A stretch of DNA of 32,000 nt. Origin: Wallemia ichthyophaga EXF-994. Its lineage: Eukaryota > Fungi > Basidiomycota. Of this stretch, positions 5,451 to 15,629 are shown in pieces. The notes beneath the pieces are model-generated. The model had not been told where the DNA came from, did no database searches, and saw nothing but the letters and a program-made list of their open reading frames with translations. The position numbers and the translations under genes were made by a program. Location of the stretch: assembly GCF_000400465.1 (NCBI RefSeq), contig NW_008806280.1, positions 120,001 to 152,000 of the forward strand, in the 5' to 3' direction. Within the stretch, counting starts at the first letter, position 1; each line of letters begins with the position of its first letter.

Positions 5451-6084
5451 ATGACTCTCGATCAGCATGCAGAGCATGATTAGGAGCGCCAGAGATCTAA
5501 ATCTGGCAAAGCATATTTGTACCAGCCATAGCTATCAATCAAGCATTTTTATTTGGAGATCATCAAAAGTTGTAAATCATCATCCGAGATGAGTTAAGTA
5601 TGGCACGCGAAAAATCAATTCGATGGATAGTGAGTGAACAAAGAATACAAAGGTATAGTTGGAGTGCTCGAGAGCTACTGAGAAGAAAGGTGTTGTAAGT
5701 TTATACAGAATGTCTGAACACGAATCTGCTGTGCTCATCTTCATGTTCACTTGGTCATTTGCAAGGCCAATTGCATTGAAATAATGACCCCGACTATCTG
5801 AAAGCTGCTTTTAATAGTGGACCTTCATCCCCTCGGCTATCTCGTTGAATCGTACTGAGACCATCATAGTCGCAGCTCTTACTACCTATTCTTGCATCAT
5901 TTTAAAATAAATTAACAACTACATGCGTATATGCATTTCTTTAAAAATAACAATAAGAGATCATGTTAAGAATTGTTCACAAAGTAGTAGAGTGTTCGCT
6001 GAAGAGTGGAGGAATTTGTAGCGTTTGTTGTTAAATAAATAAATCGTCCATGCAAATATACGCCTCTAAAGTAAGCCTATTATT

Positions 6085-12000: not shown

Positions 12001-12129
12001 GGCGACGAGCGAGGACGTTCCCAGTCGCGTATAGATCTGGTCTTCGAGGAAGCGATCTCGCAAATAGCTGAGCACAGCTTCGTCAGACGTATCCCGTAGC
12101 TTTGATATATCGTCCATGGTCGTGGACAT
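6085..12129 (-). CDS. Class V chitin synthase with N-terminal myosin motor-like domain (Mcs1/CsmA type), about 1937 aa
   Basis: Exons 12129-11828, 11784-9846, 9790-8246, 8202-8081, 8037-6709, 6661-6085 total 5814 nt in frame. Myosin P-loop GETGSGKS, switch [10 protein letters not shown] and switch II DLPGFQ. Cytochrome b5-like segments. Chitin synthase motifs DADT, GEDRYLT and QRRRW. DEK-C-like C-terminus. Confidence 0.96.
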
Positions 12130-12294
12130 GGTCGTCTTATCGATAAAAGCGCTTTTGCTAATCTGGCACTTGCGTCTTTGGCTGAAATCAAGAGGCTGTT
12201 CGAAGCCAAAAGGTTACGTAGGACATTCCAGTTGGAAATTTTTTTAGATTAGATTAAGTACAGGTATATAGGCGGAGGTGTATTATTCATTTGG

Positions 12295-13340
12295 TCACGT
12301 GCTGGAGCTGGCTCTGCCTCCAAATGCAGGATTCGGTTCGTCCTTTGTCTTGGTAAGCGACGCAGGCAGAAAGATAGCTTACGACGCACCTTCCTTATGG
12401 AGATTTTGATTCCCTGAGCGGCAAAGCACTGCAGCATGTGAGAGGAAGCCTGAATGGTATAAATTGATTACCTTTGACAGCGCAGTGCTGGACGTCATCC
12501 CCGGGAACCTGACACATGTAAGTGACGTGAAATTGAGCAATGAAACGCACTTCTTGGGCGAATAGACATGGAATTCGTTTGACATTGTTTGGGCTACGAT
12601 TGTCCTATTTTTATGTCCCACTATCAGCCTGGATTTGTGAGAAGATAAGACAGCGACAATATCCAACTCACGCTGCGATGTCCACAAGGCTAAACTGCAA
12701 CCTGAAGCTGTGTAAAGTCAACTTTGTGATTATATAATGCTCAGTACACAGCACTCACACGCCCTCCACGCGCACCGACAAATCCTAAGTTGAGTTAGAA
12801 ATGCACTAGCAGCTGACATGGACTGCACCTGGAAACAAAAAAAGATGCCGGGGTTGTTGTTGGTGTCCCTGAGCCTCATTCCCTCGGCTGTGAGGCTGCC
12901 GAGGAGATTCCGAATCGGAGTCTCTGAAGAGGTGTTTTGGTGGTGCGTGTTGGCGACTTGAGTGGCTGTGGATGAATTGAATACGTATGCACAAGATCGT
13001 AAGCCTTCAGAATCGAATATCTTGACCTGCACGAGCAAATGTTGTGGCGTGATGTCCCTGTCTGGCGTTAACTCGGAATCAAAGGAGGAGCTACGCACTG
13101 ATCAGGTATCTCAACCTCTGTGCCGCTCTCTAAAGTCTCGAAAGCCCGAACTTGGAGTACAGGCGGCGGATCTATCGGTCTCCTGTCCTTTTCGCCAAAG
13201 CCACACAATCTAGAGCGTATAGGCTGCTGTAAGATGTCTAGTGTGAATCTGATTGCATTGTTAGGCTTTAAATCTACTGGGTGCCCTGCTTACCGCACAG
13301 ATTTGCCTGCGAATTGACCATGACTGAAATTGTGCGTCAT
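12295..13340 (-). CDS. Velvet-domain transcription regulator (VelB/VelC-like), about 229 aa, 9 exons
   Basis: Exons 13340-13294, 13248-13099, 13057-12829, 12784-12759, 12707-12672, 12628-12551, 12508-12472, 12428-12390, 12342-12295; eight GT-AG introns of 41-51 nt, all phases consistent. Product contains QQPIRSRLCGFGEKDRRPIDPPP, RNLLGSL..GIFFCFQDLSVRVEGVFRLQFSL and FHVYSPKKFPGMTSSTALSKCFAAQGIKISIRKD. The start codon is uncertain; an upstream exon is possible. Confidence 0.9.
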
Positions 13341-13367
13341 CGTCGACTTGAAAGCTTTAACAGCCAC

Positions 13368-13379
13368 CGGATAAATGCA
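13368..13379 (+). promoter_or_regulatory. CSRE-like element 1 (carbon source-responsive)
   Basis: CGGATAAATGCA matches the yeast CSRE consensus CGGNYNAAYGGR with one mismatch; it lies about 390 bp upstream of the ICL ATG. Confidence 0.35.
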
Positions 13380-13625
13380 TTTAAAATTATTTGCGTGGGA
13401 GATATTGTTTGCTGTTTGTATCGCCCTCCTCGCTGTCTTTAGATCTGCAGATCTTACTCGGAAGCATATACATTTCCTCAATCTGAAGATGAATAAAATC
13501 TAATTTACATATTTGGGCCATTCTTGTCATCAGAGAAATTCCATTTTATGCCCTGTACATCTTACTTTATCCCTTAACAACTCCCATCGAGGTTGACACA
13601 GCGCACTCCCACACGCTGAGCATTG

Positions 13626-13637
13626 CGGAAGAACGGA
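13626..13637 (+). promoter_or_regulatory. CSRE-like element 2
   Basis: CGGAAGAACGGA matches CGGNYNAAYGGR with one mismatch; it lies about 130 bp upstream of the ICL ATG among further CGG/CCG triplets. Confidence 0.35.
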
Positions 13638-13766
13638 GCACCGAAGATGTGGATTATCGGGAACTATCGCCTATCGAGTCATTAGCCTTCTCGGAACGAT
13701 TAGGAAATGGCATCATCACACATACACAGCTGATCACTCGGCATTTCTCTTTCTCTAACAGCGAAC

Positions 13767-15629
13767 ATGACAGCAAAAGAAGATAATGAATTTAATAAAG
13801 AAGTAAAGGAGTTGGAATCCTTCTTCAGCGTGTGTTATTTCTTTGATATCCCTGATTGGATTCCTAACGTCACACGCAGCTTCCACGCTTCAAAAATACA
13901 GTCAGGCCGTACGCGGCAGCGCAGGTGGTCAGCAAGCGCGGCACAATCACCCACCACTACCCTTCTGATCTTCTCGCAAAGAAGCTGTGGACAATCCTCG
14001 AGCAGAAAGCTAAGAGGGGCGATACGAGCCACACGTACGGTGCACTCGATCCAGTCCAAGTCACTCAAATGGCGAAATACCTCGAAACAGTTTATGTTAG
14101 TGGCTGGCAGTCCTCGTCCACTGCTTCCTCGACCAATGAGCCCGGTCCCGATCTCGCCGATGTGGGTGGCAGCTTTCTTAATACTCCCTCTTTACTAACC
14201 CATATAGTACCCGTACGACACCGTTCCTCGCAAGGTTGAGCACCTCTTCCAAGCGCAGCTCTTCCACGACAGGAAACAGAGACACCAGCGCAGCTTAACC
14301 TCAGCCAGCGAGCGCGGTCCGGCTGTTGACTATCTACGCCCTATAGTTGCAGACGCAGACACTGGCCACGGTGGTCTTTCAGCGACTATGAAATTGGCAA
14401 AGCTTTTTGTTGAGAAGGGTGCAGCTGGTATTCACATCGAAGACCAGGCTCCTGGAACCAAGAAATGTGGCCACATGGCAGGTAAAGTTTTGGTGTCAAT
14501 CCAGGAACAGATAAATCGTCTTATCGCCATCAGATTCCAGTTTGACATTATGGGCGTAACAAACCTCATCGTCTCGCGCACAGACTCTGAAGCTGCGACT
14601 TTGATTACCACCAATGTAGATGATCGTGATCACGCATTTATCCTTGGTGCCACCAATCCAAGTATCGGCTCCCTCGTAGATGTCATGCGTCAGGCCGAGC
14701 TGGCAGGTGCCATTGGTCCTGCTCTCGAGAAAGTCGAGAGTGATTGGGCTGCTCAAGCTGGATTAAAGAAGTACAGCGAGGCGCTTGCTGACGCACTTCG
14801 CCAGAACAACATTAACGAGAGAGTCATTAAAAATTTCTTGAACGAAGCACATTTCGCAAGTCGTCATAAAACCACTCAGCTCGCTCAAAAGGCAGGTCTT
14901 CCAACTACGGTTAGCGTCTTCTGGGATTGGGATGCTCCGCGTACACGTGAAGGCTACTACCGCTACCAGGGCGGCACACAGTGTGCGGTGAACAGAGCCA
15001 TAGCGTTTGCACCTTACTGCGATTTAATATGGATGGAGGTGAGTTAATTGGTTAGCAAAGAAGCCTTGCTAACGCTATACTCTAGACGAAAGACCCTAAG
15101 CTCGCACGGGCAAAAGAGTTCGCATCTGGCGTTAAAGCCGCTTATCCAGATCAATGGCTGGCTTATAACCTCTCTCCATCGTTCAATTGGGATGCCGCTG
15201 GTCTGAGCCCACGTGAAATGCAGGCCTTTGTTTGGGAGTTGGGTAAATTAGGTTACGTTTGGCAGTTTATCACTCTCGGCGGTCTTCATTCAAATGCTTA
15301 CATTTCAGACAACTTTGCAAAGCACTTTGCTACAGAGGGTATGAAAGCCTATGTAGAACAGATCCAAAGAAAGGAGCGTGAAATAGGGTGTGACGTTCTT
15401 ACTCACCAGAAGTGGTCAGGTGCTGAATATGTGAGTTTTGTTTCACGCAATGAGGTGTCCTTACAATTTCAACTCAGATCGACGACCTTCTCTCGACTAT
15501 TCAGGGTGGTGTTTCATCAACTGCTAGTATGGGCAAGGGTAACACTGAAGCACAGTGAGTAGTGTTAATCCTCACTTGTCAGCGAAGCAGCTAATATGAC
15601 GCAGATTCGCATTACCAGCTAAATTGTAG
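13767..15629 (+). CDS. ICL1: Isocitrate lyase (glyoxylate cycle), about 540 aa, C-terminal PTS1 AKL
   Basis: Exons 13767-13829, 13880-14161, 14208-15038, 15086-15430, 15478-15554, 15605-15629. Signature [10 protein letters not shown] plus [32 protein letters not shown] and HQKWSGA. Ends FALPAKL*. Confidence 0.96.

What the first reader, a model, noticed from the sequence alone, without database searches (positions are those of the whole stretch)
12295..13340. Cryptic 9-exon minimal velvet regulator in what the ORF track shows as a CHS-ICL intergenic region
The 1.6 kb between chitin synthase and ICL shows only fragmentary ORFs. Splicing eight 41-51 nt introns, with exons as short as 26 nt, yields 229 aa that is almost entirely velvet domain. 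It has VelB-like ends (CGFGEKDRRPIDPPP; KKFPGMTSSTALSKCFAAQGIKISIRKD) but only a short low-complexity spacer where Aspergillus VelB has its long disordered insertion, and no VeA/VosA-type C-terminal extension. The last acceptor has two in-frame AGs 6 nt apart (12349-12350 and 12343-12344), giving isoforms with or without TK. Velvet proteins control development and secondary metabolism; such a fragmented gene is easily missed or mis-modelled.
Basis: partly seen in the sequence, partly recalled or inferred. Interest (0 to 1): 0.7.

Follow-up and report, generated by a model that had tools for sequence, protein, structure and literature searches.

The report
Already-annotated short VelB-type velvet gene
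The nine-exon gene is real and encodes a small VelB-like velvet transcription factor of the salt-loving fungus Wallemia ichthyophaga, but public databases already hold exactly this gene model with a velvet label, so it is an ordinary, known gene.

Summary
On the minus strand, 13340..12295, nine exons joined across eight GT..AG introns (41-51 nt) give a 229-aa protein. It matches Pfam Velvet at E=1.7e-67.

The window is Wallemia ichthyophaga EXF-994, scaffold KE007230.1. The 229-aa product is 100% identical, end to end, to the deposited protein J056_004175, which UniRef labels "Velvet domain-containing protein". The gene is therefore not cryptic. The 2013 genome paper already counts seven Velvet-domain proteins in this species.

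W. mellicola has a syntenic ortholog with all eight introns at the same residue and phase. Exons 2-9 have identical lengths, and substitutions fall mainly on third codon positions. That supports the model without RNA data.

Both sequence and predicted fold rank A. nidulans VelB above VosA and VeA. All 15 DNA-binding-region residues tested in VelB are identical here. Where Aspergillus VelB has a ~99-aa disordered insert, this protein has only 20 residues. That is short for a basidiomycete, but values of 17 and 22 aa are published.

The proposed ±TK isoform is unsupported, because W. mellicola has only the downstream acceptor. Expression and function remain untested. Interest is low.

The parts
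13294..13340 (-). Exon 1 (47 nt): ATG and residues 1-15, plus two bases of codon 16.
   Evidence: One search gives the model. It is the first ATG of the open frame with A at -3. W. mellicola has an equivalent 44-nt exon with the same phase and a conserved GQFAG(K/R).
13099..13248 (-). Exon 2 (150 nt). It includes the DNA-binding motif 1, residues 17-45 (13247-13161), FTLDILQQPIRSRLCGFGEKDRRPIDPPP.
   Evidence: R29, R38 and R39 align with VelB R71, R80 and R81, which are essential in A. nidulans (PMC13389560). The exon has the same length in W. mellicola with no gaps.
12829..13057 (-). Exon 3 (229 nt). It includes the 20-residue Ser/Thr-rich spacer, residues 94-113 (12975-12916), at the position of the VelB disordered insert.
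   Evidence: One search gives the exon and the spacer length. Residues 97-106 have pLDDT below 50 in the predicted structure.
12759..12784 (-). Exon 4 (26 nt), the shortest exon.
   Evidence: It has the same length and flanking splice sites in W. mellicola.
12672..12707 (-). Exon 5 (36 nt).
12551..12628 (-). Exon 6 (78 nt).
12472..12508 (-). Exon 7 (37 nt), encoding FPGMTSSTALSK, part of the conserved C-terminal motif.
   Evidence: It is 86% identical to W. mellicola at the DNA level.
12390..12428 (-). Exon 8 (39 nt), encoding CFAAQGIKISIRK.
12295..12342 (-). Exon 9 (48 nt including the TGA stop): the short C-terminal tail DEPNPAFGGRASSST.
   Evidence: The deposited protein uses this acceptor, and it is the only acceptor present in W. 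mellicola.
12343..12350 (-). End of intron 8 with two in-frame AGs 6 nt apart (12350-12349 and 12344-12343). The upstream one would add Thr-Lys.
   Evidence: One search shows both products. One search places the CTTAC branch-like motif 11 nt from the downstream AG and 5 nt from the upstream AG. Use of the upstream AG is not shown.
13341..13766 (.). 426-bp divergent intergenic region shared with the isocitrate lyase gene (ICL CDS starts at 13767 on the + strand). It is the presumed promoter region.
   Evidence: Gene coordinates come from the deposited record, converted to window coordinates. Promoter function is inferred, not tested.

Best explanation
This is the protein-coding gene J056_004175 of Wallemia ichthyophaga EXF-994. 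It is an intron-rich (8 introns in 690 nt of CDS) but otherwise ordinary member of the fungal velvet family, of the VelB type.

Shown or computed: the 229-aa product is essentially one velvet domain, an NF-kB-like beta-sandwich.

Inferred from A. nidulans VelB/VosA: it binds DNA through the N-terminal motif QQPIRSRLCGFGEKDRRPIDPPP, with the arginine cluster R29/R38/R39. It dimerises through the C-terminal two-thirds of the domain, as a homodimer or with one of the other six velvet-domain proteins of this species. It thereby regulates developmental or sporulation-type and stress or secondary-metabolism genes.

Between the two halves of the domain it has only a 20-residue Ser/Thr-rich, probably disordered linker. 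Aspergillus VelB has a ~99-aa intrinsically disordered domain there, which tunes VelB stability and partner choice.

The main mRNA most likely uses the downstream acceptor of intron 8, giving the 229-aa form.
For: Gene model:
- Exact spliced frame, 100% identity and coverage to the deposited 229-aa protein, and the same 1046-nt gene span in KE007230.1.
- A syntenic ortholog in W. mellicola, with the gene order DNA pol phi, adh_short, ICL, velvet, myosin-chitin synthase.
- All 8 introns sit at the same residue and phase. Exons 2-9 have identical lengths with no gaps, and indels occur only in introns.
- Differences by codon position are 42/35/131, and dN/dS is about 0.09.

Family:
- Pfam Velvet E=1.7e-67.
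- The AlphaFold2 model has pLDDT 87.3 and pTM 0.82. Its best PDB matches are the three solved velvet domains.

VelB type:
- phmmer scores: VelB 4n6r_B 134.9 bits, VosA 101.6, VeA 77.0.
- Foldseek E-values: VelB 4.5e-20, VosA 3.8e-15, VeA 2.3e-11.
- Named close hits are 'Velvet complex subunit B', 'Putative VelB' and 'Velvet complex subunit 2'.
- All 15 conserved DNA-binding-region residues mutated in A. nidulans VelB (L61 Q65 P67 R71 C73 G74 G76 K78 D79 R80 R81 P82 P85 P86 P87; PMC13389560) are identical here in the alignment.

Spacer: 20 aa against 94-99 aa in Aspergillus with the same boundaries. It has low pLDDT at residues 97-106.

Partners: the genome paper's Pfam table gives 7 Velvet proteins.
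Against: - I have no transcript evidence. The deposited model was predicted ab initio with GeneMark-ES (PMC3849046), so it does not validate the junctions independently. Only the comparative evidence does that.
- DNA binding, dimerisation and biological role are inferred from Aspergillus. None has been tested in any Wallemia species, and no paper in the library links Wallemia to VelB.
- The clade assignment rests on score ranking. My NJ tree, built with fragmentary VosA/VeA references and no bootstrap, did not resolve the position.
- The K/R-H residue pair reported at the N-terminal boundary of VelB inserts (PMC12614781) reads F-N here. That resembles Mucoromycota homologs more than Dikarya VelB.
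- No other basidiomycete appeared among the nearest named hits.
Confidence: 0.85

Rival explanations
1. The gene produces two functional isoforms, 229 and 231 aa, through the tandem acceptors of intron 8.
For: Both AGs are in frame and both give full-length products. Alternative 3' splicing is the second commonest alternative-splicing mode reported for this species, where 730 genes show alternative splicing (PMC3849046). The extra Thr-Lys would fall just after the conserved IRK, where model confidence is dropping into the low-confidence tail. It would probably be tolerated.
Against: W. mellicola has a single acceptor, which aligns with the downstream AG. The upstream AG lies only 5 nt from the one branch-like motif (CTTAC). 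The acceptors used in this gene lie 9-12 nt from theirs. Intron 2 already skips an AG 4 nt upstream of its acceptor. The deposited model uses the downstream AG.
Confidence: 0.15
2. The protein is not a VelB ortholog. It belongs to another velvet lineage (the VosA clan or a basidiomycete-specific clade) and merely keeps conservative motifs.
For: The spacer is short and the boundary residues differ from Dikarya VelB. My crude tree gives no supported placement. In core columns the identities are not far apart: 53% to VelB, 46% to VosA, and 56% to the incomplete VeA fragment. Most basidiomycete velvets fall in clades Bas-Velvet1-3, and the Bas-VelB clade is small at 58 proteins (PMC10845976).
Against: VelB is the best match by sequence and by fold, despite the gap penalty for its ~93-residue insert. 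CGFG(D/E)KDRRPI and QGIKIxIRK match VelB, not VosA (AGGKEKERKPV, QGVKLRIRK) or VeA, which carries a 3-residue insertion in motif 1. The closest named ascomycete proteins are all VelB/Vel2.
Confidence: 0.1
3. The model is an annotation artefact or a decaying pseudogene, pieced together from short fragments.
For: The exons are very short (26-39 nt). The deposited model is ab initio. No transcript data were available to me.
Against: The frame stays intact through nine exons. The complete velvet domain is present with a high-confidence fold. Splice sites and exon lengths are conserved in a species whose introns are only 38-62% identical. There is strong third-position bias and a low dN/dS.
Confidence: 0.02

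Closest known systems
Aspergillus nidulans VelB (PDB 4N6R chain B), the partner of VeA and VosA in the velvet complexes
   Same: It is the best sequence match (134.9 bits) and the best fold match (E=4.5e-20, TM 0.81 on the target). All 15 tested DNA-binding-region residues are identical, including R71, R80 and R81. The C-terminal motif KKFPG...QGIKIxIRKD is the same. A non-conserved Ser/Thr-rich segment interrupts the domain at the same place.
   Different: The segment is 20 residues here against ~99. There is no long N-terminal leader: the domain starts at about residue 11, against about residue 55 in VelB. The boundary reads YVFN instead of LVKH. Total length is 229 aa, against about 330-370 aa in Aspergillus and Penicillium VelB proteins.
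W. mellicola ortholog (WALSEDRAFT_62056; strain models such as E3Q11_00488)
   Same: It is 76% identical with the same neighbours. All eight introns share position and phase, and the spacer is also 20 aa.
   Different: The deposited W. mellicola models are imperfect. One starts at an ATG inside intron 1 and lacks exon 1. The other retains intron sequence. There is only one acceptor at intron 8.
Short VelB-type proteins of Mucoromycota, Glomeromycota and Zoopagomycota (the 'Muc-VelB' clade and its relatives in PMC10845976)
   Same: They are the nearest non-Wallemia hits, at 40-48% identity over about 90% of the query. They have similar lengths (about 220-300 aa), spacers of 10-50 aa, and an N-type boundary such as HVFN or LVIN.
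   Different: They belong to different phyla. They usually occur as several paralogs per genome (PMC12614781). They have fewer introns (4-6), only partly at shared positions.
Basidiomycete VelB proteins with short inserts (Melanotaenium endogenum 17 aa, Jaminaea sp. 22 aa; Table S1 of PMC12614781)
   Same: They are basidiomycete VelB-type proteins whose insert is about as short as the 20 aa found here.
   Different: Both are listed among the basidiomycetes, and to my knowledge belong to Ustilaginomycotina, not Wallemiomycetes. I could not fetch their sequences to compare. The basidiomycete average insert is 204 aa.

Membership tests
Velvet family (Pfam PF11754) | Significant match to the Velvet profile above the curated cut-off, spanning the domain. 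| tested here: met
   228.3 bits against a cut-off of 25, E=1.7e-67. There are two stretches, and the best covers residues 99-215, equal to profile positions 116-236 of 237.
Velvet family (Pfam PF11754) | Conserved N-terminal motif 1 and C-terminal motifs 2 and 3, separated by a variable region (PMC10845976). | tested here: met
   Residues 17-53 and 114-217 align to VelB, VosA and VeA. In the 99-sequence alignment the invariant columns include Q23, P25, R29, G32, G34, K36, D37, R39, P43, P44, K188, F190, P191 and G192.
Velvet family (Pfam PF11754) | NF-kB/Rel-like beta-sandwich fold. | tested here: met
   This is a predicted structure only. pLDDT is 87.3 and pTM 0.82. The top seven PDB matches are the VelB, VosA and VeA velvet domains; weaker matches go to p53 and STAT beta-sandwiches.
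Velvet family (Pfam PF11754) | Sequence-specific DNA binding and dimerisation. | not testable with these tools
   Only the residues can be checked. R29, R38 and R39 correspond to the essential VelB R71, R80 and R81.
VelB clade | Closer to VelB than to VosA, VeA or VelC. | tested here: met
   phmmer gives 134.9, 101.6 and 77.0 bits for VelB, VosA and VeA. Foldseek gives 4.5e-20, 3.8e-15 and 2.3e-11. Named near hits are VelB/Vel2. No VelC structure or reference was available.
VelB clade | Supported phylogenetic placement inside the VelB clade. | tested here: inconclusive
   In the NJ tree on 138 core columns, rooted on a VosA fragment, Wallemia sits on a long branch among VelB-type sequences. 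There is no bootstrap, and the partial VeA fragment nests artefactually.
VelB clade | An intrinsically disordered insert inside the velvet domain at the conserved site (PMC12614781). | tested here: inconclusive
   A 20-aa Ser/Thr-rich, low-confidence segment sits at the right place, and the published minimum is 6 aa. However, it is far below the basidiomycete mean of 204 aa, and the K/R-H boundary pair is replaced by F-N.
VelB clade | Heterodimer formation with another velvet protein (VeA or VosA in Aspergillus). | not testable with these tools
   Six further Velvet-domain proteins are reported for the species, but I could not retrieve them. VeA is described as Ascomycota-specific.

The most novel reading that the evidence does not exclude
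Wallemia may carry a natural 'insert-less' VelB within the Dikarya. This could be the near-continuous VelB-like copy that Koehler et al. (PMC12614781) suggest was lost in higher fungi. Alternatively it could be a secondary shortening that accompanied the extreme genome compaction of Wallemia. In A. nidulans the insert destabilises VelB and steers heterodimer choice. If that holds here, the Wallemia velvet network would lack that layer of control, which might relate to the species' reduced development and lost sexuality.
Probability: 0.2. Interest if true: 0.35.

Novelty: already known. Interest (0 to 1): 0.12.

Why it matters
It matters little beyond housekeeping. The gene and its domain label are already public.

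Three things have modest value:
- Comparative evidence now backs an ab initio model that has very short exons.
- The two deposited W. mellicola models of the ortholog are shown to be wrong. One misses exon 1 and the other retains intron sequence.
- Wallemia VelB-type proteins sit at the short end of the basidiomycete range for the VelB disordered insert. Wallemia is absent from the held text of the supplementary files of the two recent velvet surveys I checked.

This could make Wallemia a convenient natural comparison for work on what that insert does.

Tried and rejected
- A literature search for Wallemia plus velvet returned only the Velvet assembler and 'velvety' colony descriptions. Wallemia plus VelB returned nothing relevant.
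- The held text of the supplementary files of the two velvet surveys contains no Wallemia entry.
- The bacterial promoter/terminator scan of 12100-13800 was at shuffle level and does not apply to a fungus.
- Rfam at gathering threshold and ARAGORN found nothing in the whole window.
- tblastn of the protein against the window found no second velvet-like locus.
- The NJ tree with PDB-derived VosA and VeA fragments was too crude to settle the clade.
- NG86 and YN00 dN/dS failed because synonymous sites are saturated. Only the LWL85 value and the codon-position counts are usable.
- I could not map the gene to the per-gene expression table of the genome paper. Its accession is masked in the tools, and the locus tag does not occur in the held files.
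- I could not retrieve the other six Wallemia velvet proteins or any basidiomycete VelB sequence with the available searches.
- I considered horizontal transfer from Mucoromycota, because the nearest hits are early-diverging fungi. I rejected it. Identity is uniformly about 40-48% to all groups. The gene is syntenic in two Wallemia species. Its small introns match the others in this gene and the small genome-wide mean of 61 bp.

Full report
**What is there.** This gives an uninterrupted reading frame from ATG 13340 to TGA 12297-12295.

- Exons are 47, 150, 229, 26, 36, 78, 37, 39 and 48 nt.
- Introns are 45, 41, 44, 51, 43, 42, 43 and 47 nt, all GT..AG.
- The product is 229 aa. Using the AG 6 nt further upstream in the last intron adds Thr-Lys and gives 231 aa.

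The coordinates, exon count, intron sizes, quoted peptides and tandem acceptors are all confirmed.

**Whose gene it is.** The 229-aa product is 100% identical over 100% of its length to a deposited 229-aa protein. That protein is 'hypothetical protein J056_004175 [Wallemia ichthyophaga EXF-994]', labelled 'Velvet domain-containing protein' in UniRef.

The encoding record is scaffold KE007230.1 of GCA_000400465.1. The called gene there spans exactly 1046 nt and lies between isocitrate lyase and a myosin-motor chitin synthase. In window coordinates:

- the ICL CDS starts at 13767 on the + strand;
- the chitin synthase ATG is at 12129 on the - strand.

The genome paper predicted genes ab initio with GeneMark-ES (PMC3849046). 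Its Pfam table lists 7 proteins with PF11754 Velvet. So the gene is not cryptic.

**Is the model right?** The deposited model is ab initio and I had no RNA data, so I used comparison. W. mellicola has the ortholog in the same gene order: DNA pol phi, short-chain dehydrogenase, ICL, velvet, chitin synthase.

- In the DNA alignment every intron has GT..AG at the corresponding place.
- Exons 2-9 have identical lengths in the two species and contain no gaps. All indels fall in introns.
- Introns are 38-62% identical, against 62-86% for exons 2-9.
- An exact protein-to-genome mapping puts all eight introns at the same residue and phase in both species.
- Substitutions in the spliced frame fall 42/35/131 on codon positions 1/2/3. 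dN/dS is about 0.09 by LWL85, with synonymous sites near saturation.

This is the signature of a translated, constrained, correctly spliced gene.

Exon 1 is also conserved. W. mellicola has ATGAGGAAC...AATATAAG at L002 5921-5964, which has the same phase and encodes ..GQFAGRNI. ATG 13340 is the first Met of the open frame and has A at -3.

**The tandem acceptor.** W. mellicola has a single AG, which aligns with the downstream acceptor. In this gene, and in most introns of its ortholog, a branch-like YTNAY motif lies 9-12 nt before the acceptor that is used.

In intron 8 the only such motif (CTTAC) is 11 nt from the downstream AG and 5 nt from the upstream one. Intron 2 likewise passes over an AG 4 nt before its acceptor. 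I therefore infer that the 229-aa form is the main product. Minor use of the upstream AG is not excluded, and only junction reads can settle it.

**What it encodes.**

- Pfam Velvet scores 228.3 bits against a cut-off of 25, E=1.7e-67.
- Against solved structures, phmmer ranks A. nidulans VelB (134.9 bits) above VosA (101.6) and VeA (77.0).
- An AlphaFold2 model built on 99 homologs is confident, with pLDDT 87.3 and pTM 0.82. Stretches with pLDDT below 50 are residues 1-4 and 97-106, and the C-terminal tail is also lower.
- Foldseek gives the same order: VelB 4.5e-20, VosA 3.8e-15, VeA 2.3e-11. Distant p53 and STAT beta-sandwiches follow.
- Named close relatives are 'Velvet complex subunit B', 'Putative VelB' and 'Velvet complex subunit 2'.
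[quoted passage not shown] These include the essential R71, R80 and R81, which correspond to R29, R38 and R39 (PMC13389560; alignment).

My NJ tree used only fragmentary VosA and VeA references and did not resolve the position. The VelB assignment therefore rests on score ranking and motifs, not on a supported phylogeny.

**The 'minimal' aspect.** I used one pair of boundaries throughout: the xxVx(N/H) strand and the xRNLxG motif.

| Group | Segment length (aa) |
|---|---|
| Both Wallemia species | 20 |
| Aspergillus VelB | 94-99 (published value 99) |
| Other ascomycetes | 51-145 |
| Mucoromycota, Glomeromycota, Zoopagomycota | 10-121, mostly 20-50 |

Koehler et al. report mean insert lengths of 105 aa in Ascomycota, 204 aa in Basidiomycota and 28 aa in 'Zygomycota' (PMC12614781). 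They never saw a zero-length insert, and the minimum was 6 aa. Their table lists basidiomycete values down to 17 aa (Melanotaenium) and 22 aa (Jaminaea).

The Wallemia protein is therefore at the short extreme for its phylum but not unprecedented. Across fungi as a whole, velvet-only proteins of about 190-260 aa are common among the nearest representatives. The exhaustive search found 3247 representatives at E<=1e-3 and 106 at E<=1e-30. There is no C-terminal extension: the protein ends 14 residues after the domain.

**How it most likely works.** Shown or computed: this is a constrained gene encoding a complete velvet domain with the VelB-type DNA-binding residues.

Inferred from the Aspergillus literature (PMC12614781, PMC13389560, PMC10845976): the protein binds DNA with its N-terminal motif and dimerises through the rest of the domain, probably with one of the six other velvet proteins of the species. 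It would then regulate developmental and stress or metabolite genes.

In A. nidulans the insert lowers VelB stability and promotes selective heterodimer formation. A 20-residue linker suggests that this control layer is weak or absent here. That is speculation. No Wallemia velvet protein has been studied in the searched library.

**Side observations.**

- The gene has 8 introns in 690 nt of CDS, in a genome that averages 2.41 introns per gene.
- Compared with Fennellomyces, Rhizophagus and A. calidoustus velB homologs (3-6 introns), intron 1 shares its column and phase with Rhizophagus.
- Intron 2 lies two codons from a phase-2 position that all three comparators share, in a variable loop. It is probably the same intron.
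- Introns 3, 6, 7 and 8 are not shared with any of the three.
- Both deposited W. mellicola models are flawed.
- No non-Wallemia basidiomycete appears among the 120 best named hits or the ten representatives I looked up.

**Verdict.** The gene is an already annotated, ordinary member of a well-known family. The isoform idea lacks support. Interest is low.

Noticed in passing
L002 5921-6957 (W. mellicola CBS 633.66, JH668223.1): The deposited 216-aa model WALSEDRAFT_62056 starts at an ATG inside intron 1 (L002 6001). It misses a conserved 44-nt exon 1 (5921-5964, MRNYRQGQFAGRNI...). A corrected 228-aa model maps exactly with eight GT..AG introns.
   Followed up: yes
Protein P0003 (W. mellicola E3Q11_00488 cluster, 10 member sequences): This 246-aa model retains intron 5, which appears as a 15-aa insert WVQSCVFVCRLTNSR. 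It also adds 4 residues from intron 7 and reads through intron 8 into a wrong C-terminus. The same small-exon gene is therefore mis-modelled across a set of strain annotations.
   Followed up: partly
window 12130-12294 and 13341-13766: Gene spacing is very tight. Only 165 bp separate the velvet stop codon from the ATG of the downstream same-strand myosin-chitin synthase gene. A 426-bp divergent region is shared with isocitrate lyase. The velvet 3' end and the chitin synthase promoter and 5'UTR must overlap or abut.
   Followed up: no
window 12295-13340, compared with L003, L004 and L005: Intron density is about 11.6 per kb of CDS, against a genome mean of 2.41 introns per gene. Introns 1 and 2 appear ancient, being shared or nearly shared with Glomeromycota, Mucoromycota and Aspergillus velB homologs. 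Introns 3, 6, 7 and 8 are not shared with those three.
   Followed up: partly
window 13062-13063 (minus strand, inside intron 2): An AG lies 4 nt upstream of the acceptor used by intron 2. Using it would shift the frame. It lies 6 nt from the TTAAC branch-like motif and is evidently skipped.
   Followed up: partly
hit lists: Apart from Wallemia, no basidiomycete is among the 120 best named hits or the ten representatives looked up. The nearest relatives are Mucoromycota, Glomeromycota, Zoopagomycota and ascomycete VelB, all at about 40-48% identity. This may reflect slow evolution of the short form and divergence of other basidiomycete velvets. It was not resolved.
   Followed up: partly
protein P0052: A velvet protein is deposited under the plant Carpinus fangiana (FH972_021225). 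In my crude tree it groups with ascomycete VelB, so it is probably fungal contamination of a plant assembly. PMC10845976 raises the same question for plant velvet hits.
   Followed up: no
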